Assembly: GCA_907165135.1 (NCBI GenBank)
Contig: OU015569.1
Location: 11,656,001 to 11,720,000, forward strand
DNA from: Oikopleura dioica
Taxonomy: Eukaryota; Animalia; Chordata
DNA: 64,000 nucleotides
Direction: 5' to 3'
The position numbers and the translations under genes were made by a program. The notes under the pieces are model-generated. The model searched no databases, was not told where the DNA came from, and saw nothing but the letters and a program-made list of their open reading frames with translations. Shown here piece after piece: positions 43,708 to 60,120 of the stretch; position 1 is the stretch's first letter; each line of letters opens with the position of its first letter.

Positions 43708-43951
43708 CTGGGCTCGGCAACCTGTGTAGAAAACCTGAGTCAGGGTCTGAAAAGGCTGAAATGAAAAGCCGCGAAGCGGCTTTTTTTTAAACGAAGCCGC
43801 GGAGCGGCTTCGCTAATATTCTCATTACAATCTATCAGAAATTCTGGGGAAGCCGCTTCGCGGCTTCGTTTTTGAAAAGCCGCTACGCGACTTTTCATTA
43901 AAGATCTTTCAGACCCTGACTCAGGTTTTCTACACAGGTTGCCGAGCTCAG
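43708..43951. mobile_element. Family A MITE, four hairpins
   Basis: TIRs plus loops GAA, GGA, TTC, TAC; abuts CCCTAA repeats. Confidence 0.93.
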
Positions 43952-45207: not shown

Positions 45208-45872
45208 AACTCTGAAAACGCGCAAAGAAATGATTGATTCCGCGCATCAATCATTTGAATCGGCATTTAAAATAATTTAAAGTCTTCAGCAGCAATCTTC
45301 TTATCTCCTCAGAGCTTTGGCTTTCAGAATGAAATCTTCTGATCTCTTCCTTTTTCACTTTTTTCTTTCAATTTCAGAGGCTTCCGGAATCGAGAATTGT
45401 ACCAAAGAAGCTTGCGCTATCGTAATTTTACTTGAGAATTTTGGCACTTTTATGCGTTTTCTAGTGTTACGACCATCTTTATTTTTCAAGCAAAAAATCA
45501 AAAGGATGCGAAAATTTACTCAACCTTCAAAATTGCTGCTCAAGACACATAACCGACAAAGATCTTCTTTCCTACACAAAGTTCTGCTTGAAAAATGAGC
45601 TCATCTACGTCGCCTGGATTTATGATGCCTTCAAAGTCGTTCTTGACAAGACTCATTTGAGCGATGCTGAGTACGAACTCGCGAATCAAAGACTTAGGCT
45701 GGAGGAAATTTGCCCCAACTGTACAACTTGCGATAGTGAAGAACAGGTCATGTCTGGTGAGTTTTGTTTTCGATGAAAATTCGATGAGTTTTTCTAGTGA
45801 AAATCATGTTTGTTTATTGCTTCGTTGGATTGATGTGCATTCTTGGTTGTTTTGCCAAGGGTTCCGAATTTC
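45208..45872. repeat. About 665-bp direct duplication, copy 1 (copy 2 at 49973-50636)
   Basis: Near-identical sequence from AACTCTGAAAACGCGC to GGGTTCCGAATTTC; includes + strand exons and a short GT-AG intron. Confidence 0.95.
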
Positions 45873-46403: not shown

Positions 46404-48781
46404 ATGGATCGAGCAATCGAATTGAACAAGAGAATCTGTTCTTTGGTCGAGCTTCTGGGAGGCGAAGGAATTCCGAGTGTTCTTGATCGAATCGGCGGCG
46501 ATTCCGGCCATAAGACGGCAGGTTTGCAAGAGGCTTCTGAAAAAGAGAAAATGGACGTGAAAAGTCAAGAATCTGATGAGTATTACGAATCTGATGAATT
46601 TTCTGACTCTGACGAGTCTTATGAGTACGAAAAAGTTTCAACTTATCCAGAAGAACTGACAAGAGAAGCTGTTGAGAATTGGCTGGAAGAGTTTCAAAAG
46701 AAATTGAAGAGAGAAACGAGCAGAGATGATTTGGACAGGTTGATTTTGTCGATGGACAGAATGAAATTTGAAGATGATGAGTGTGGTCAATGGGACGAGG
46801 TCATTTTCGAACATGGACAAGGAAAGTTGTCTGGAAGATATGAGGAAGAATGGGAAATAACTTCTTTTCAAAAAATGATTCTTTCGAAAAACCCAGGTTT
46901 CGAGGGACGAATAATTCAACGTTCGGAATTAAAAGAAGAAACCGGAGAATGGGTTCTCGATGAATCTTTGGAATCGATTTCAGTTGGAGGAGAAGCGATT
47001 GTTTTGAAAGAAAAATTTGGAGAATTGGAAGTGGCCGTTCGCGTTCAGGCTTTTGACTTGGCGCTGTTTGTGGGGAATGAAGAATTGGGGTTTGAAATTC
47101 ATCTTTCGGAAGGTATTTTTTGTTTTTTTAAATATTTTTAAGAATACGATATCGCTCAAAACAAAGAAGAAAATTATGCCGGAGTGGTTCCTTTTCACAA
47201 AAACGTGGTCAAGAATTATGTCAACATCGAAGTCTTCTTGAGCTCTGATTTGAGAAAAGAAGACTGTGTTGGATGGATCACGATTATGGAGAAATGCGAC
47301 TCGGATTTGAGGAGCAAATTGAAGAATAATGAGTTGAATTTGGAAGAAAGGAAGAAAATTGCGATTGGCGTCAAAGAGGGATTGGATTATTTGGAGAAAA
47401 TTGGAATTTGGCATTTCGATCGGAAGCCAGAAAATATCCTTTTGAAAAATGGAGAAGCAAAATGGATCGATTTTAGCATTATACACGAAGAGACTGGACG
47501 AGAGAGTTATCGGGAGATGGGATACGCGAGGAGAGGAAGCAGATTTAGAAATAACAGCTGTTTATGTAAGTTTTGAGTTTGTTGAAAAATGCTCGTGTTC
47601 TATCTTTTTTTTCGTAGATGCTGGGTCTCCTGCTTTTTCTTATGGCGCGCAGATAGGCGCAAACTTCGGAGGGAATAGATCTCTTCCTCATATTTTGATT
47701 CTTTGCGAGTGGAAGACGGCCTGGACTCTTTTATTCAAACCAATCGAAGAAAAAGAAAGAGAAATCATCAAAAAAGAACTTGAGGTAAGTCTTTACTTTA
47801 TATAAAAGAAAATATCTTTTCTTAGACTTGCAATGCTGGCTGGCTCTCAAAGAAAAGAAAACCATCCACCGAAGAAATCCAAAACTTGTCAAAAATCATT
47901 TCTCTTGAAAACGCGTCTTCTGATTTTTGCTTGGACGATCCGAATTTGACGAAATCAACTGCCATGGCCAGTCTGAAACAAAAACTGACAAAAAAGATCA
48001 ATTTCGACTTCAAAAATGTTACGAAGAATGTTTTAAACCAAAAAGAAAGCGATCTCTGTGTACCCATTTCTGTTTCGGTGCTTTTGAGATGGACACTCGA
48101 AAATGATTTGAAAGTTGTGTATTGGGAAATGGAAAGATGTTTTACTATTGAAAAAATCTTCACTCAATTGACAATGGTGATTTATCCGCGCAGTTTGGCT
48201 GGCTTCAATCACAATCCGAAATTTGAAGAACAAGAATTTCAAGAGAACAAAATTGAATTGCTTCTTAAAAGATTGAAATTCGGAACCTATTTGAATGAAC
48301 CTGGATGGAAGATGATGATGGATATTTATTTTAGCGAGTTTTCTTATGAAAGACGTTAGTAAATTAATATAAAGTCTAAGAACAAATATTTATTAAATAT
48401 TCAGTCTTTCTCCATCCAAAATTCGTCTTCTCCCGTCCCTTAACAGTCACCGGCGCCTATCTGGAACCCGGCGACGGGAAAACACCACTTTTCCACCAAA
48501 TGGTGCTTGACCGAATCGAATACTCCGATTTCATTCTCCAAAACACTCTCATCGCCCATTCTGACTCTCAGCTCAGAATTCCTGTTTCCAGAGAATACTA
48601 CGTCGATGAAGAAACGATGAGAGACTGTTTCAACAGCTACAACGGTTTCGTCTATTATGGAGACAACAACGAGATTTTAGAGCTTGTCAACGAAGAATTC
48701 AACATGAAAACCGAAAAATGGTATCTTCTGCCTCATGCATATTCAATTACTCTTCGAAGAAAAAGACACTCTCTATCTTAA
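46404..48781 (+). CDS. Degenerate protein kinase domain fused to a papain-like (clan CA) peptidase domain; acidic N-terminus
   Basis: Kinase part: SVGGEAIV, VAVR, IMEKCDSDL, HFDRKPENILL, WIDFS. Peptidase part: VLNQKESDLCVPIS (Gln/Cys), FHQMVLDRI (His), ILQNT (Asn). Four short GT-AG introns. Confidence 0.75.
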
Positions 48782-49972: not shown

Positions 49973-50636
49973 AACTCTGAAAACGCGCGAAGAAATGATT
50001 GATTCCGCGCATCAATCATTCGAATCGGCATTTAAAATAATTTAAAGTCTTCAGCGGCAATCTTCTTATCTCCTCAGAGCTTTGGCTTTCCAAATGAAAT
50101 CTTCTGATCTCTTCCTTTTTCACTTTTTTCTATCAATTTCAGAGGCTTCCGGAATCGAGAATTGTACTAAAGAAGCTTGCGCTATCGTAATTTTACTTGA
50201 GAATTTTGGCACTTTTATGCGTTTTCTAGTGCTACGACCATCTTTACTTTTCAAGGAAAAAATCAAAAGGATGCGAAAATTTACTCAACCTTCAAAATTG
50301 CTGCTCAAGACACATAACCAACAAAGATCTTCTTTCCTACACAAAGTTGTGCTTGAAAAATGAGCTCATCTACGTCGCCTGGATTTATGATGCCTTCAAA
50401 GTGGTTCTTGACAAGACTCATTTGAGCGATGCTGAGTACGAACTCGCGAATCAAAGACTTAGGCTGGATGAAATCTGCCCCAACTGTACAACTTGCGATA
50501 GTGAAGAACAGGTCATGTCTGGTAAGTTTTGTTTTCGATGAAAATTCTAAAGTTTTTCTAGTGAAAATCATGTTTGTTTATTGCTTCGTTGGATTGATGT
50601 GCATTCTTGGTTGCTTTGCCGAGGGTTCCGAATTTC
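49973..50636. repeat. About 665-bp direct duplication, copy 2
   Basis: Matches 45208-45872 with scattered substitutions. Confidence 0.95.
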
Positions 50637-51258
50637 GAGCTAATGAAAGACAGACTATTTATACCTACTTTTTGCTAAGGAACCTGTGTGGGAAACCTGA
50701 GTCAGGGTCCTGGAAAAGCTTTGATAAAAGCCGCTTTTCATCAAAGCATTTCAAGAACCCTGACTCAGGTTTCCTACACAGGGAGCCGAGCCTAGTCTTG
50801 TCTATTTAGGACCCTACTCTATCAATAGAAAGAATTATTAAGGGAGTATCAAACAAATCTGCAACCCTAGAAAGCCGTTGGTTGGCGCTGCTACGAAGAA
50901 TCAAAAGAGCCGGATATTCAATTGCCTTGCAGTGTCGACCAAAAACTCATAATTTCAAAAGAGATCGACAAGCAAACCGGGTTGCCCGTTATTTCACTCA
51001 CTGACAACACAAATTTAATAAAAGTCGAGTACATCTAACTTTTTCGTTTTTAGATTTTATTAATTTGAATATCAGTAATTGCACGGAAATAAATGAACTA
51101 CAGAAAATGAGTGAAGCAGAAAGTAAAAATAATGAGTGACTCATTATGAGTCGCTAAAGTTGTTCTTTTGTTTTTTCAAGTTACAGTTTCTTGAACGAAA
51201 TTGAAAGAAATTGATTATTTTGAGGAGTAAATACAAGAAAAAGGTCTAATAATGTTTT

Positions 51259-53556
51259 CTAACCGGCCTTGCCGAGTTCGGTCTTTATCAAAAGCTTGTT
51301 CGTTCGGTGGATGAAGGAGTCGAGGATCGAAGAAATCGTCCAGACGCCGCCGATGATCGCGCAAACTGACGTGGCGAAATGAACCAACGATCGGCGAGTC
51401 TCCGTCTAATAAAGAATGATAAGGGGGTAGCAGTCGTTGTTTTTATCTTTCTTCTAACGTTTCTTCTGGTGTAAATGTCCTTTGCAAAAGAACCTGTGTC
51501 AGATAAAAGCCGTTTTTGTTAATCTTTTCACTACTGTATGAGTCTGGACTCCTAAGCTGTGTAAGAAACCTGAGTCAGTCTCCTAGAAAAACTTTGAACT
51601 ACAAATTCAATCTAATTTTTCAGCTGAGGCGAAGCAGTTTCGCGGCTGGGTTTTTAAGAAAGCCTCTTTTCATCTTTCATCAAAGCTCTTCTAGGACCCT
51701 GACTCAGGGTTTTTACACTGGTTCCCGAGCTCAGAGTCCAGTAGTAGAGAAAATTCAACCGAAAACGGCTTTTATCGCCGGCTTCATCCTTATTTTTATA
51801 AAAAAAGAACTGTAGCTGTACCTTGATAACTGCAATAGGCGCAATTTCGAAGTGAAAGTTGATGCCTGGAAGTCGACTGCTCATCTGGCTGAGCGCTTTT
51901 TCATGCCGCGTCACCGAGAATTGATTCGTCGCCGTCTGCGTTCCGTCCAGTTTACGGAACTCGGTTGGGATCACCTTGAAGTTGTAGTGCCAGGCCATGT
52001 TCAGCGCCTCAGCTTTGTGCTAGAATTGAAAATTAGAGCAGATCGAAACAGTCAAAACTTACTTCGGAGTTGTCCAGTGGATTTTCTTGGCCGGGGAAGA
52101 CTTCGCCAAAGCTCAAGTGATGGATTGTGTGGCTAAAGAAAGCTTGATGGCAACAGTTGTTATTCGGCATGTTTACCTAGTATCGAAATTCATGTGCTTC
52201 ATCCCTCGAATATCGTGAACAACGCTTCCATCTAAAACGAGCGTCTTTCCAGGCGAAATCTGCAGCGATCCAGAAACTCGATTTACTTCCAAATGTCCGT
52301 GAACGCGGCAACTCTCTCCCAGCGTCTTTTTCAGCTCTTCTTCCAAGTTGAAATGCTCTAAAAACAAAGCCGCTCAGAAAAAATCCTCGAAGACAAGAAT
52401 TACCGTTGACGCACTGGGAGAACTGCTGAGCGCTAGAATCAAACGCCCAGCCCTTGTTTCTATACGCTTGTTGGACTTCTTCGCAGGAATTGCAGCAGGG
52501 GTGTTCCTCCGTTTCCGCACCGTAGCAACTTTGGCACTCGTCTTCTTTCAACGCCAGGCCGGTTTCTTCTTCTTATTTTGGATCAGAGAGAATTTAGCGC
52601 AAACTTTGCTCGGCGATCTGTGTAGAAAGATGACTCAGGGTCCTGAAATAGCTTCGCTAGACCTTTAAAAGATATTGAGACCCTTACTCAGGTTTCTAGA
52701 CAGGTTTTCAAGCTCAGACGCGAAGAAATCAGAAAAATAATATATTTAATTGATGATCCTTTCCTTTCTTTTCATCTTGAAGCTTTTGCGCGTTGATTTC
52801 TTCGACCTTCTCCGAGTTCGAAACTTCTTTTCCGTCCTTCATCCTCGTCTTGAATAGCTGATGTTCCGCGTCTGCTCTGTCTCCCGTCAAATCCATCGCG
52901 TCGATCGAAAAGTAGTTGCATGGCAAACCAGCTACTGTCAGATCCAGGTTTAGCACTAGCTTGCCCCCGCGAGTATTGTCCACTCGTAGCTCCGATACAA
53001 CCTTGAATTTGAGTTCTTTATCTTTCTTAACTTTTCTACAAAACACTGCGCAATTAAGAAATTTTTCCATCAAGCCTCGGATTGGTCGAACAATCAAGAG
53101 TTCCAAATCAATGGAGAAGCGTACCTGATTGTTCGACTGATCAAAGAATGAATAGAAAATGACCATCTGGGCTCAGCAACCTGTGTAAAAACCTGAGTCA
53201 GGGTTCTGAAAGAGCTTTTTATTGGAGCTCTTCCAAAAAACCTGACTCAGGTTTCTACTCAGGTTTCTGAGCCCAAATGGTCGTTACTGAGCGACGCTTC
53301 TGTAGAAAAATATAAATACGAGTAAATAAATTAGTTTAATTCAATATTAAACTTATCAAAATACAATTAGTAAAAAAAATCTGATGTAGAACTCTTCCTC
53401 AGTCGTCAAATAATAATTCAGCTCTGAGAAAAAGAGCAGCATGCAAAGAAGACTGCAGCATATCGTAATTACGGCGCCGGTGACAGTCCTTTCGCGGAAA
53501 TCCTCGACTGGCTTGGTGTACGCGTCAAACTTGCGAATTTGGCTGAGGAAGCCCAT
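51259..53556 (-). CDS. ERGIC3: ER-Golgi intermediate compartment protein 3 (Erv46)
   Basis: IRKFDAYTKPVEDFRERTVTGAVIT, LPCNYFSIDAMD, CQSCYGAE...CCNSCEEVQQAY...GW, CRVHGHLEVNRVSG, HTIHHLSFG, NQFSVTRH, CAIIGGVWT, end ELGKAG*. First intron has a GA donor. Confidence 0.95.
53167..53276. mobile_element. Family A MITE, minimal form, in ERGIC3 intron 1
   Basis: TIRs; the flanks GACCAT/ATGGTC extend the inverted repeat. Confidence 0.88.
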
Positions 53557-54203: not shown

Positions 54204-55480
54204 ATGTCTTTGTTGTTTTCTCTCTTTTTTCTAACGTTCTTTCACGAAGCAAGTCCGAAAATAAGTAAGTTTTTCGAAAAATAAAAAGTGCTAAAGTGGA
54301 GTTGAAAGGTGGATCGGAAGGCTGGTTCCCTGGAGCGGACGGTTTCGCCTATGAAATCGACGAAGAAAAGGGAGAGATCATTTTCAGGCTGGATGATCTG
54401 GTCGATATGCCTTACTATCTTGGAGTCGGATGGAACAACAATACTCACGACGATAGTACTCATACAAAAACCATGATTGTAAGGCTCAATCCTGGGTTCG
54501 GCAATCGGTTTCGCAACCTGAGTCAGGGTCCTGACTCAGGATCCTTCAGGACTCTGACTCAGGTTTTTAAGCAGGTTGCCAAGCACAGGCTAAAACTAAG
54601 GGTCGGCACCGACCTAGAAACCAGCCTGGATGGTTGGTTTGTCGATTTTGGTCGGTTTTTTGACAGGTATTTACAAAAAAAACGACCAAAATCAGACCAA
54701 AACCCAAGCATCAAAAATGCAGGTCGATGCCGACCCTAAGCTCTTATCAAAGTTGATAATTGTAGAACTCGGAGCTGCTGATTTGGGATGGAGGATCAAT
54801 TCATAAAGATGAAAATTACAAGGGCGCGATTTGGCCGTACTTTGGAGGTCACTTTGCTGGCGGAGCCGAATGGAGGTTAGCTTTTCAAGAGTTGAATTTA
54901 CTTTACGATTTTTTAGCGAGCAAGCAATGACTTACTGGAAGCGAACGCCAGGATCGGCTCATCCAGATGGAAAGCCGCGCTGGTCGCGAACTCTGAAGCG
55001 GCCGGAAGGATGCAGCAAATGCATTGAAATCGAAAAGAACAAAGAGTACTGGGTCATGTCCGCTCGGGGGTCGACTTTCGACGGCGAAGGCAATTGGAAG
55101 AGACAAAAAGAAGACCCAAAATACGCGGCGTGGTCCGACTGGCCCGGCCCAAGAGCTGGCTATCATGTAATTTTAATCTTAATTGAGTCGGATATTGAGT
55201 TGGTTTGTTTAACAAGAATTCTAGTACGCAAAAACCCAGCGAGAAAAAATCATCATCTGGAAAGAACATGAATTCGACAATTTGTGTAAGATGCCCCTCT
55301 TTCAAAAAACTTTTTCAAATCAGTCTTTCAGATCACATGACAAACCATCACGAAGACGCTTGGAACAAACGAGTGGACTCGATTGGACAGAAAAATCTAA
55401 CCAAAGTCCCGCAGAATTCAGCTCAAATCCTCTGTCTCTTCTCTAGCTTGCTTGTTTTCTTGGGAATAAATTTGGTTTAA
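54204..55480 (+). CDS. Secreted, possibly GPI-anchored protein, weakly DOMON-like
   Basis: Hydrophobic N-terminus MSLLFSLFFLTFF; YLGVGWNNN, RWSRTL, YWVMSARG; hydrophobic C-terminus QILCLFSSLLVFLGINLV*. The first junction phase is unresolved. Confidence 0.55.
54492..54588. mobile_element. Family A MITE, degenerate
   Basis: TIR remnants; possible TSD GCTCAATC / GCTAAAAC (6 of 8). Confidence 0.75.
54600..54736. mobile_element. MITE with GGG termini and TAA TSD (PIF/Harbinger-like by inference)
   Basis: TAA|GGGTCGGCACCGACCT ... AGGTCGATGCCGACCC|TAA. Confidence 0.75.
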
Positions 55481-58473: not shown

Positions 58474-59158
58474 TTAGAAATCCAAGCCACGGGACCAACA
58501 ACGAGCGCTTATTACCCTGTACTTTTCTTTTTGATTTTCGAGCTGTTTTTTCATCTCTTCTTCTTTTTCCTGAAATTTTTGCTCGCACAAGTGACGATCA
58601 ATTACACGACTTTCCGCAGCGCAAAAATCACATCTGAAAGTCTTTTTAGTCAGTTTGCTTAGAATACTAAATCTCACCTGACAAGCCATCTACATGATAT
58701 TTCCCAGTGCTCGTCGAAGTCCGGATACTTCATTTCCATCTTATAATTTTTCAAAAGAACCGAAAGTGAGTTTCTACCTTGCATTCTTTATCAGAGCATC
58801 GGACCAATAGTTTATTCATCATCTTCAGATAAAACTCCGAAGCAGGGTAAAATGTTGGTGGAGGACGCCATGGTCCATTTAGCAAATCGAGGCTTACTTC
58901 TTTATCACAAATAGGACAGTTGGTGTGATAAGTTTTATCGAGCTTTGTATCGTCTATCCAGCATTTCCGGCAAACATAATTGTTGCAGCAGGCCGTCACT
59001 ACCGGATCTACGATGTCTTCACCGCATTTTTTGCATTGGAAATCTTTGGATCGGAGACTAGCAGTAATGCCTTTTAGAGGTTTCCAAATAAGACGCCCTG
59101 TTGAAGCTCTCTCAGGATCATCTGAATCGTAATCTTCGGAATTCGGCTGCTCTATCAT
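58474..59158 (-). CDS. RING-finger protein with TRAF-like zinc finger and coiled coil, paralog 1
   Basis: CKKC...TACCNNYVCRKC...CPIC; LLVRCSDKECK/MEMKYPDFDEHWEISC; FRCDFC...HLCEQ. Confidence 0.8.
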
Positions 59159-59382
59159 TTCAAAATTATTCGTTAAAAGTGAGCCTTTGACCAAGGGCCT
59201 TGGTCCAAGGCGACGTCGCTTTTATACAAAGCTGCGGAGTCTCGCGAAATTTCATTCGCAGAAGAGACAGAAATTGATCTTTCTCGATTGAGAATTGCAG
59301 TTCTTTTCGTTTATTTTTTTCAGTGATATCTTTTCTAATAATGTTTTCCCAAAAAGTGTCAATTACAGTGAAACTTCAATTT

Positions 59383-60120
59383 TTAAAATTCCCAATCAAA
59401 TTCGAATTCTTCATAAAAGAGTCTTCTTTGTCGATCAATCAAGTTCTTGTACTTTTGTTTTTGAGCCTCAAGTTCCTTTTTCATCTCTTCCTTTTTCGCG
59501 CGAAATTTTTGTTGACAAAGGTGACCGTCCTGAACTCGACTTTCTGTCAAGCAGAAATCGCATCTAAACTTTCTATCAATCCGGAAAACGTAGAAAATCT
59601 CACCTGACAAGCCTTTTGCAGAACTTTTCCCAATGCTCGTCGAAATCTTCGAACTTCATTTCCATCTTCAAATTCAATCTGTTTCGTGAGAAAGAATTGA
59701 TTTTACCTTGCACTCAGTATCGCAGCATCGAACCATTCGTGCATTCATCATCTTCAGAAAAAACTTCGAAGCGGCGTAAAATGTTGGCGGAGGAGGAAAA
59801 CGAGGGTAGAAGCCATGTGGCGAATCAATATGGAAATCAACTGCTTTAAAACAAATCGGACAGTCGCTGTGAAAACTTCCATCAAAGTCTGAGGTGTGAA
59901 GATCGTCTGTCCAGCATTTTCGGCAAACATAACTGTCGCAGCAGGCCGTCACTACTGGATCTGCAATGTCCTCGCGGCATATTTTGCATTGGAAGTCTTT
60001 GAACCGGAGATTCGCGGCAATGTCTTTCTCGGGCTTCCAAAACAGGCGTCCTGTTAGAGCTCTCTCGGGATCATCCGACTCGTAATCCTCGAACTTGAGC
60101 TCGTTGTTTCGTCTCTCCAT
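59383..60120 (-). CDS. RING-finger protein with TRAF-like zinc finger and coiled coil, paralog 2
   Basis: CKIC...TACCDSYVCRKC...CPIC; same two intron positions as paralog 1; ends EEFEFDWEF*. Confidence 0.82.

What the first reader, a model, noticed from the sequence alone, without database searches (positions are those of the whole stretch)
46404..48781. Degenerate kinase fused to a papain-like protease with an apparently intact Cys-His-Asn triad
The kinase has a decayed Gly loop (SVGGEA), Arg in place of the beta3 Lys (VAVR), HFDRKPEN and DFS for DFG, so it is a likely pseudokinase or atypical kinase. In the same spliced frame follow NQKESDLC (Gln 48039, Cys 48057), FHQM (His 48494) and LQNT (Asn 48542), the order and context of clan CA peptidases. 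There is no signal or pro-peptide. A cytosolic kinase-protease fusion is not a standard animal architecture I recognise. It could be a sensor-gated protease in immunity or cell death; the neighbouring lectin, RING and ASB genes and the duplication suggest a fast-evolving locus (inference).
Basis: partly seen in the sequence, partly recalled or inferred. Interest (0 to 1): 0.78.

Follow-up and report, generated by a model that had tools for sequence, protein, structure and literature searches.

The report
Kinase fused to papain-fold peptidase
This is an apparently intact five-exon gene of an Oikopleura-type tunicate that joins an unusual protein-kinase domain to a very divergent papain-type cysteine peptidase; it is one more copy of a large, unstudied gene family, and neither its function nor its expression has been shown.

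Summary
Window 46404-48781 (+) is an open five-exon gene of 734 codons with GT-AG introns of 30, 52, 41 and 50 nt.

- **Kinase.** Exon 2 passes Pfam's Pkinase threshold. The domain is atypical rather than decayed. H-x-D-x-K-x-x-N is kept in all 39 copies checked. GGEA (22 of 23) and A-V/L-R (23 of 23) are constant in the full-length relatives. Only DFS (G to S) is peculiar to this copy.
- **C-terminal domain.** It has no Pfam or PDB sequence match. An AlphaFold model of an O. dioica relative (pLDDT 81.5) matches only papain-fold peptidases in the top 50 rows (Z up to 9.3). Gln, Cys, His and Asn are kept in 78/80, 78/80, 53/56 and 65/72 relatives, with papain's spacing.
- **One gene.** Annotated O. 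dioica proteins of 690-720 aa are collinear with all five exons.
- **Range.** All named relatives are O. dioica; the rest are metagenome fragments. I found no paper on the family.
- **Expression.** No RNA read matched this copy.
- **Earlier notes.** The scan has already reported this family many times on other DNA of this genome.
- **Function.** The immune or cell-death role is untested speculation.

The parts
46404..47112 (+). Exon 1: start codon, an acidic Ser/Asp/Glu/Tyr-rich N-terminal extension, a conserved region of unknown fold, and the kinase N-lobe start (GGEA loop, AVR strand)
   Evidence: ORF from the first ATG. It aligns to residues about 20-185 of annotated O. dioica relatives. 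The donor GT is at 47113.
46980..46997 (+). SVGGEA, at the position of the kinase Gly-rich loop
   Evidence: GGEA is present in 22 of 23 full-length relatives.
47040..47042 (+). Arg of VAVR, at the position expected for the beta3 Lys
   Evidence: A-V/L-R is present in 23 of 23 full-length relatives. The assignment to beta3 rests on the spacing from the loop and is an inference.
47113..47142 (+). Intron 1, 30 nt, GT-AG
   Evidence: Read-through would stop at 47139. Removing the intron gives exact residue-for-residue collinearity with P0211.
47143..47565 (+). Exon 2: kinase C-lobe core
   Evidence: Pfam Pkinase E 5.5e-10, 39.5 bits against a cut-off of 31.7. PDB kinases match at E 4e-5, with HFDRKPEN aligned to HRDIKPEN.
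47412..47435 (+). Catalytic loop HFDRKPEN (non-RD; Asp 47418, Lys 47424, Asn 47433)
   Evidence: H-x-D-x-K-x-x-N is present in 39 of 39 copies.
47469..47477 (+). DFS in place of DFG (Asp kept, Gly to Ser)
   Evidence: Relatives have DFG in 36 and DYG in 2 of 38. DFS occurs only in this copy.
47618..47784 (+). Exon 3: end of the kinase (AGSPAF, CEWKTAW) and the linker
   Evidence: Collinear with relatives. The motif G-S/T-P-G-F is conserved.
47826..48354 (+). Exon 4: first half of the papain-fold domain (helical lobe)
   Evidence: 42 relatives at E down to 3e-65. There is no in-frame ATG before the conserved LDDPNLTKS, so this exon needs the upstream exons to be translated.
48039..48041 (+). 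Gln, candidate oxyanion-hole residue, 6 residues before the Cys
   Evidence: Gln in 78 of 80 relatives.
48057..48059 (+). Candidate catalytic Cys
   Evidence: Cys in 78 of 80 relatives, Ser in 2. In the model of the relative P0030, the equivalent Cys77 opens helix 77-92.
48405..48781 (+). Exon 5: second half of the papain-fold domain (beta lobe) and the stop codon
   Evidence: 15 relatives at E down to 1e-44.
48494..48496 (+). Candidate catalytic His (FHQM)
   Evidence: His in 53 of 56 relatives. It lies in strand 203-215 of the model.
48542..48544 (+). Candidate third triad residue Asn (LQNT), 16 residues after the His
   Evidence: Asn in 65 of 72 relatives. It follows strand 218-222 of the model.

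Best explanation
The gene encodes a 734-residue protein with no evident signal peptide, so it is probably cytosolic. It is a member of a large gene family known by name only from Oikopleura dioica, plus unnamed metagenome fragments.

**Layout.** An N-terminal region of unknown fold is followed by a non-RD protein-kinase domain. That domain is followed in the same chain by a very divergent papain-fold (clan CA) domain.

**Peptidase.** I think this domain is a working cysteine peptidase or isopeptidase. It would use Cys 48057 as nucleophile, His 48494 as base, Asn 48542 to orient the His, and Gln 48039 for the oxyanion hole.

**Kinase.** This domain keeps its catalytic loop. It carries a family-wide Arg where the ATP-binding Lys should be, and in this copy DFS for DFG. 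Most likely it acts as a nucleotide-binding or docking module that controls or targets the peptidase in cis. Strong phosphotransferase activity seems less likely.

**Shown versus inferred.** Shown: the gene structure, the kinase homology, the papain fold of a close relative, and the conservation of the catalytic set. Inferred: peptidase activity, the role of the kinase domain, the cellular location and any biological role.
For: **Gene model**
- Canonical splice sites in consistent phases.
- Collinear with annotated O. dioica proteins of 690-720 aa such as P0216, P0211 and P0220.

**Fusion in relatives**
- P0129 carries the kinase DFG region through to the end of the peptidase in one uninterrupted 449-aa ORF.
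- P0031, L002 and L004 show the same link between the two domains.

**Kinase**
- The Pfam Pkinase hit is above threshold.
- The catalytic loop is invariant in 39 of 39 copies.
- GGEA (22 of 23) and AVR/ALR (23 of 23) are constant in the full-length relatives.

**Peptidase**
- An AlphaFold model of relative P0030 (52% and 45% identical to exons 4 and 5) has pLDDT 81.5 and pTM 0.76.
- An exhaustive structural search gave only papain-fold proteins in the top 50 rows. C1 peptidases 8jcr, 3ois and 1xkg scored Z 9.3, rmsd 3.2-3.5 A, with 154-157 residues aligned. C39 PCAT1 scored Z 8.8.
- ESM Atlas shape and feature searches agree.
- In the model the Cys opens a long helix, and the His and Asn lie on or beside neighbouring strands.
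- Gln, Cys, His and Asn are kept in 78/80, 78/80, 53/56 and 65/72 relatives.
- This copy carries the consensus residue at 53 of 54 columns that are at least 85% conserved.
- The spacing is Gln-6-Cys-129-His-16-Asn, against 6-134-16 in papain (papain numbering from my own knowledge).

**Selection**
- Pairwise dN/dS to the closest relatives is 0.42-0.48 in the peptidase part and 0.20 in the kinase part.
Against: - The folded protein is a relative, not this gene's own product. The exons were not joined.
- Z 9.3 is only a little above the stated background of 7-8. The argument rests on all top rows being of one fold.
- Foldseek found nothing at E <= 0.001.
- Neither a single sequence nor the family profile matches any solved peptidase. 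No member reaches a Pfam peptidase threshold.
- None of the 151 reads laid from four RNA runs of the same species label was 99% or more alike. All lay only partly on the gene, which points to paralogues. Expression and the splice junctions of this copy are therefore unproven.
- Arg for the beta3 Lys usually cripples a kinase (general knowledge), and the DFS change may weaken it further.
- The closest environmental relative, L006, is a dead copy with GFG for DFG and an in-frame stop. This subfamily may be decaying.
Confidence: 0.6

Rival explanations
1. This copy is a young, silent pseudogene. The reading frame is still open, but the gene is no longer used.
For: - No RNA read at 99% or more in four runs.
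- The DFG Gly is lost in this copy alone.
- dN/dS to the closest relatives is fairly high at 0.42-0.48.
- The closest environmental relative is itself broken.
- Earlier scan notes report several broken copies of the family.
Against: - 734 codons are open across five exons, with all splice sites canonical.
- 53 of 54 conserved peptidase positions and 41 of 44 conserved positions in exon 2 are kept.
- dN/dS is below 1.
- The RNA runs cover few samples, only about half of each bulk run was read, and the strain may differ from the one assembled.
Confidence: 0.2
2. Both domains are pseudoenzymes. The protein would be a scaffold that binds partners without catalysing anything.
For: - Arg replaces the beta3 Lys in every full-length family member.
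- There is no sequence match to any characterised peptidase.
- Papain-fold pseudoenzymes are known (PMC10318531).
Against: - Near-invariance of exactly the four catalytic positions in paralogues that are only 40-60% identical overall is hard to explain without catalysis.
- The same holds for the Asp, Lys and Asn of the kinase catalytic loop.
Confidence: 0.12
3. The papain-fold domain is not a peptidase. It would be another enzyme of the same fold, such as a transglutaminase, deamidase or acyltransferase.
For: - The fold is shared by such enzymes (PMC10318531).
- The structural matches include a contact-dependent inhibition toxin domain (8ssm, Z 7.7) and a 'CD lyase' (22oc).
Against: - The best and most numerous matches are true peptidases of families C1, C39, C47 and C54.
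- The Gln-6-Cys and His-16-Asn spacing is that of papain.
- The only recurring weak Pfam trace is Peptidase_C1_2.
Confidence: 0.1
4. The kinase and the peptidase are two separate gene products: neighbouring cistrons, or two genes as annotated at the P0030 locus.
For: - In the O. dioica reference, P0030 is annotated as its own 297-aa protein, 38 nt after a 343-aa kinase gene.
- O. dioica has operons with trans-splicing (my own knowledge).
- There is no RNA evidence here.
Against: - The split at P0030 comes from a one-base frame change. The other frame reads straight on, as in P0031 and L002.
- In the window, exon 4 has no in-frame ATG before the strongly conserved LDDPNLTKS stretch.
- The gap between exons 3 and 4 is a 41-nt GT-AG intron in phase.
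- More than twenty annotated relatives of 560-720 aa carry both domains.
Confidence: 0.05

Closest known systems
Papain family C1 peptidases (Pfam PF00112, and PF03051 for the bleomycin hydrolase type)
   Same: - The fold is the same: Z 9.3 to calotropain, xylellain and Der p 1.
- The order Gln, Cys, His, Asn and the spacing 6/129/16 resemble papain's 6/134/16.
- Like bleomycin hydrolase, it lacks a signal peptide and a pro-peptide, and about 70 conserved residues precede the Cys.
- 7 of 148 relatives give weak Peptidase_C1_2 hits. The one located (P0016) covers the Cys region.
   Different: - No member reaches Pfam's threshold.
- A family profile finds no solved C1 peptidase.
- It is fused to a kinase.
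- The motif around the Cys is NLCVPIS, not CGSCWAF.
EDR1 domain (PF14381) fused to Raf-like kinases (plant EDR1/CTR1 type, Toxoplasma TKL1)
   Same: A papain-like fold domain and a protein kinase domain sit in one cytosolic chain. This is the published precedent for the combination (PMC10318531; PMC5874906 mentions the EDR1 domain).
   Different: - The order is reversed: EDR1 is N-terminal to its kinase.
- EDR1 is described as similar to C71 and C93 peptidases, not to C1 or C39.
- There is no Pfam PF14381 hit here.
- The kinase is of a different type, and the family occurs in an animal lineage.
C39 double-glycine peptidase domains of ABC transporters (PCAT1, ComA)
   Same: A compact papain fold of similar size: Z 8.4-8.8, rmsd 2.9-3.2 A, with 124-128 residues aligned. 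These are also the best ESM Atlas shape matches.
   Different: They are bacterial and fused to ABC transporters. There is no sequence similarity. Their specificity for Gly-Gly leader peptides is not shown here.
Non-RD protein kinases and pseudokinases
   Same: The catalytic loop lacks the Arg before the Asp (HFD, HCD, HYD). An Arg replaces the beta3 Lys, as happens in some pseudokinases (general knowledge).
   Different: The Asp, Lys and Asn of the catalytic loop and the DFG Asp are all kept. The unusual motifs are invariant across the family rather than eroded.

Membership tests
Protein kinase superfamily (Pfam PF00069) | Profile match above the curated threshold | tested here: met
   Exon 2 scores 39.5 bits against a cut-off of 31.7, E 5.5e-10. 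PDB kinases match at E about 4e-5.
Protein kinase superfamily (Pfam PF00069) | Catalytic loop Asp, Lys and Asn (HRDxKxxN) | tested here: met
   HFDRKPEN aligns to HRDIKPEN. The H-x-D-x-K-x-x-N positions are present in 39 of 39 copies. The Arg of HRD is absent, so the kinase is non-RD.
Protein kinase superfamily (Pfam PF00069) | DFG motif with the metal-binding Asp | tested here: met
   The Asp is kept. The motif reads DFS here, against DFG or DYG in 38 relatives.
Protein kinase superfamily (Pfam PF00069) | Beta3 Lys (VAIK) that binds ATP phosphates | tested here: not met
   VAVR: an Arg is present in this copy and in 23 of 23 full-length relatives. The assignment to beta3 rests on spacing only, because no kinase model was made.
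Protein kinase superfamily (Pfam PF00069) | Gly-rich loop GxGxxG | tested here: inconclusive
   The loop reads S-V-G-G-E-A. One canonical Gly position is kept and the others are Ser and Ala. GGEA is conserved across the family.
Clan CA (papain-fold) cysteine peptidases | Papain fold: a helical lobe plus a beta lobe | tested here: met
   The test used a model of relative P0030 (pLDDT 81.5). The top 50 of 48,161 chains are all papain-fold, with Z up to 9.3. This gene's own joined product was not tested.
Clan CA (papain-fold) cysteine peptidases | Nucleophile Cys at the N-terminus of the central helix, preceded by a Gln | tested here: met
   Helix 77-92 of the model starts at Cys77. Gln and Cys are each present in 78 of 80 relatives. 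Both are present in the window at 48039 and 48057.
Clan CA (papain-fold) cysteine peptidases | His and Asn/Asp on neighbouring strands, within reach of the Cys | tested here: inconclusive
   His207 lies in strand 203-215 and Asn223 lies just after strand 218-222. His is kept in 53 of 56 and Asn in 65 of 72 relatives.
Clan CA (papain-fold) cysteine peptidases | Peptidase activity | not testable with these tools
   This needs biochemistry.
Family C1 (PF00112 / PF03051) | Profile match above the curated threshold | tested here: not met
   The window exons give no hit. Among 148 relatives, 7 hit PF03051 below threshold, with a best E of 0.0015. P0016 scores 15.3 bits against a cut-off of 22.
EDR1 domain plus kinase (PF14381 + PF07714) | PF14381 match N-terminal to the kinase | tested here: not met
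   There is no PF14381 hit, and here the papain-fold domain is C-terminal to the kinase.

The most novel reading that the evidence does not exclude
The family may be a lineage-specific intracellular alarm or cell-death switch of appendicularians. A non-RD kinase-like domain would sense a signal, or serve as bait, and would release or aim a cytosolic papain-fold (iso)peptidase in the same chain. This would fill part of the gap left by the reduced conventional immune gene set of Oikopleura.
Probability: 0.1. Interest if true: 0.85.

Novelty: new variant of a known kind. Interest (0 to 1): 0.5.

Why it matters
Kinases and papain-fold peptidases are both well known, and a papain-like domain fused to a kinase is published for EDR1-type proteins. 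This family is different:

- It has the opposite domain order.
- Its peptidase domain is one that no domain database recognises.
- Its kinase signature (GGEA, AVR, non-RD) is constrained.
- It has dozens of copies in one small animal genome.

I found no paper on it. If the peptidase is active and is controlled by the kinase domain, the family would be a new single-chain link between phosphorylation-type signalling and proteolysis. It would also be a new clan CA family. For this particular copy, the value is that it is intact and carries a natural DFG-to-DFS change.

Tried and rejected
**Searches that found nothing useful**
- Single-sequence searches of exons 4 and 5 against PDB sequences found nothing usable. 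A 148-row family profile against PDB also found nothing.
- Foldseek against PDB gave no match at E <= 0.001 for either model. The rows with the highest probability were C39 peptidases and staphopain.
- tblastn of the exon translations found no second copy in the window.
- A metagenome scan with exon 2 found only relatives of 59-60% identity, all with DFG. It could not tell whether DFS is shared by close kin.
- Four paper searches found nothing on an Oikopleura kinase-peptidase family.

**Models and alignments that failed**
- The first AlphaFold run used a 41-row alignment and gave pLDDT 56.8, too poor to use. A 148-row alignment fixed this.
- The kinase N-lobe did not align to PDB kinases by sequence.
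- MAFFT misplaced exon 5 and exon 2. I replaced those alignments with A3, A4 and a pattern scan.

**Other**
- Four RNA runs gave no read of 99% or more on the gene.
- I considered Asp 48509 (LDRI) as the third triad residue. I rejected it because it lies five residues along the same strand as the His, and it is replaced in divergent members that keep the Asn (P0181).
Full report
**What is in the sequence**

Window 46404-48781 on the + strand holds five open pieces that join through GT-AG introns:
- Exon 1: 46404-47112
- Exon 2: 47143-47565
- Exon 3: 47618-47784
- Exon 4: 47826-48354
- Exon 5: 48405-48781, which includes the stop codon

The introns are 30, 52, 41 and 50 nt long. The model has 734 codons.
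- SVGGEA at 46980-46997
- the Arg of VAVR at 47040
- HFDRKPEN at 47412-47435
- DFS at 47469-47477
- Gln 48039, Cys 48057, His 48494 and Asn 48542

That step is left out and listed under referred steps.

**Is it one gene?**

A search starting from a database relative returned dozens of annotated Oikopleura dioica proteins. Those of 690-720 aa (P0216, P0211, P0209, P0220 and others) align to the five exon translations in order.

The residue counts across the first three junctions fit exactly. For example, with P0211:
- exon 1 residue 234 pairs with residue 178;
- exon 2 residue 1 pairs with residue 182, which accounts for two more exon 1 residues and the split codon;
- exon 2 residue 140 pairs with 321, and exon 3 residue 1 with 323.

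This also supports the very short 30-nt first intron. Exon 4 has no in-frame ATG before the strongly conserved LDDPNLTKS stretch, so it cannot be translated on its own.

In relatives the two domains lie in one uninterrupted ORF. P0129 has 449 aa on a contig of about 1.5 kb, and P0031, L002 and L004 show the same link.

The one case where the O. dioica reference annotates the peptidase part as its own protein is P0030, which lies 38 nt after a kinase gene. That split comes from a one-base frame change. The other frame reads straight through, as in the metagenome copies.

**RNA**

Four RNA runs carrying the same species label gave 151 laid reads. None was 99% or more alike, and all lay only partly on the gene. 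Their loose ends read like other family members.

The reads therefore most likely come from paralogues, which would mean the family is expressed. Expression and the splice junctions of this copy are not shown.

**The kinase**

Exon 2 passes Pfam's Pkinase threshold at 39.5 bits against a cut-off of 31.7. It aligns to solved kinases with HFDRKPEN on HRDIKPEN and DFS on the DFG position.

Conservation across relatives:

| Feature | Relatives carrying it |
|---|---|
| H-x-D-x-K-x-x-N | 39 of 39 copies, including this one |
| DFG position | 36 DFG, 2 DYG of 38 relatives; DFS only here |
| GGEA at the Gly-loop position | 22 of 23 full-length relatives |
| A-V/L-R at the expected beta3 position | 23 of 23 full-length relatives |

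'Degenerate' is therefore the wrong word for the family. The domain is a constrained, atypical, non-RD kinase with Arg where the ATP-binding Lys should be. A Lys-to-Arg change at beta3 normally cripples a kinase (general knowledge), so activity is doubtful.

This copy adds its own Gly-to-Ser change in DFG. I could not model the kinase, because both folding jobs went to the peptidase domain.

**The C-terminal domain**

By sequence it matches nothing known:
- no Pfam or NCBIfam family for exons 4 and 5;
- no solved structure by single sequence;
- no solved structure by a 148-row family profile.

It has many relatives, with exon 4 at E down to 3e-65 and exon 5 at E down to 1e-44. A profile search of 1.84 billion representative proteins gave 201 hits at E <= 0.001. 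Every named hit is from O. dioica, and the rest are unnamed metagenome fragments.

I folded P0030, an O. dioica relative that holds the whole domain in one database protein. It is 52% and 45% identical to exons 4 and 5.
- A shallow alignment gave a poor model with pLDDT 56.8.
- A 148-row alignment gave pLDDT 81.5 and pTM 0.76, with most blocks from residue 81 on above 90.

Structural searches with the better model:
- Foldseek found nothing significant. Its highest-probability rows were C39 peptidases and staphopain.
- The exhaustive aligner returned only papain-fold proteins in its top 50 of 48,161 chains.
  - C1 peptidases 8jcr, 3ois and 1xkg: Z 9.3, rmsd 3.2-3.5 A, 154-157 residues aligned.
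  - C39 PCAT1: Z 8.8.
  - ATG4A: Z 8.3.
  - Staphopain: Z 8.1.
  - UfSP: Z about 7.
- Z 9.3 alone is only a little above the tool's stated background. The uniformity of the list is what convinces.
- ESM Atlas shape and feature searches also point to C39 and C1 clusters.

In the model, Cys77 opens helix 77-92. His207 lies in strand 203-215, and Asn223 follows the next strand. That is the papain arrangement.

Across relatives, Gln is kept in 78 of 80, Cys in 78 of 80 (Ser in 2), His in 53 of 56 and Asn in 65 of 72. The window copy has the consensus residue at 53 of 54 well-conserved columns. Its spacing is Gln-6-Cys-129-His-16-Asn, close to papain's 6-134-16.

One trace has not been noted before in this scan, according to a words look-up. 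Seven of 148 relatives give sub-threshold hits to Pfam Peptidase_C1_2, the cytosolic, pro-peptide-less bleomycin hydrolase type. The one hit I located (P0016) covers the stretch that includes the Cys. This is a lead to the domain's origin, not a membership.

**Selection**

Pairwise dN/dS against the closest environmental relatives is 0.42-0.48 in the peptidase part, at dS 0.27-0.48. It is 0.20 in the kinase part, at dS 1.25. Evolution is fairly fast but under constraint.

The closest relative, L006, is itself dead. It has GFG for DFG and an in-frame stop.

**Context**

The neighbours are ordinary and mixed: myo-inositol oxygenase, an ERGIC protein, an RF-1 domain protein, a weak C-type lectin hit and two RING genes. 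A 665-nt direct repeat of 97% identity flanks the gene, but there is no second copy of the gene in the window. I see no evidence for an immune cluster.

**What is known**

Four paper searches found nothing on this family. A 2023 survey of papain-like proteins notes that EDR1 domains (PF14381) are papain-like and are often fused to kinases (PMC10318531). The combination therefore has a published precedent, mainly in plants, but with the opposite domain order, a different papain-like family and a different kinase type.

The scan's own notes show that this family has been reported many times on other pieces of this genome. My independent tests agree with them.

**Verdict**

The gene is an apparently intact member of a family known by name only from Oikopleura, joining a kinase to a papain-fold peptidase.

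The peptidase is probably catalytically competent. The kinase domain is atypical and, in this copy, possibly further weakened. It more likely regulates or targets the peptidase than signals by phosphorylation.

Function, expression of this copy and any immune role remain untested.

Noticed in passing
window 45208-45872 and 49973-50636: A 665-nt direct repeat of 97% identity brackets the gene, with start-to-start spacing of 4765 nt. Its ORFs have no Pfam match. Whether it marks a recent segmental duplication or a recombination scar is unknown.
   Followed up: partly
L001:3930-4010 (O. dioica GCA_000209535.1, FN653015.1): At the P0030 locus the reference annotates the kinase and the peptidase as two genes 38 nt apart. 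A one-base frame change near L001:3950-3960 causes the split. The other frame reads on without a break, as in metagenome copies P0031 and L002. This is either an assembly error or a strain-specific frameshift.
   Followed up: partly
L006 (ENA metagenome contig k141_725605), 31-1220: The closest environmental relative of this gene has GFG in place of DFG and an in-frame stop in the peptidase part. Its kinase part is much more diverged at synonymous sites (dS 1.25) than its peptidase part (dS 0.47), which suggests a mosaic or gene conversion between paralogues.
   Followed up: no
window 43708-43784 / 43875-43951, with related copies near 50667-50795, 51628-51737, 53167-53275 and 54540-54589: Short inverted-repeat elements (arms of about 77 nt, 90% complementary) recur around the locus. 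They look like the MITE family noted elsewhere in this genome.
   Followed up: no
window 58751-59194 and 59674-60120, minus strand: Two neighbouring paralogous ORFs carry weak RING-finger matches (zf-C3HC4_3, E about 6e-4).
   Followed up: no
window 47234-47327: RNA reads of 90-95% likeness pile up on the most conserved kinase stretch and then run on into unlike sequence. They most likely come from paralogues, which would mean the family is expressed.
   Followed up: partly
window 46550-46640: This copy has an N-terminal extension of about 60 residues, absent from the annotated relatives. It includes an acidic Ser/Asp/Glu/Tyr-rich run (SQESDEYYESDEFSDSDESYEYEK). The real start codon is unverified.
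   Followed up: no
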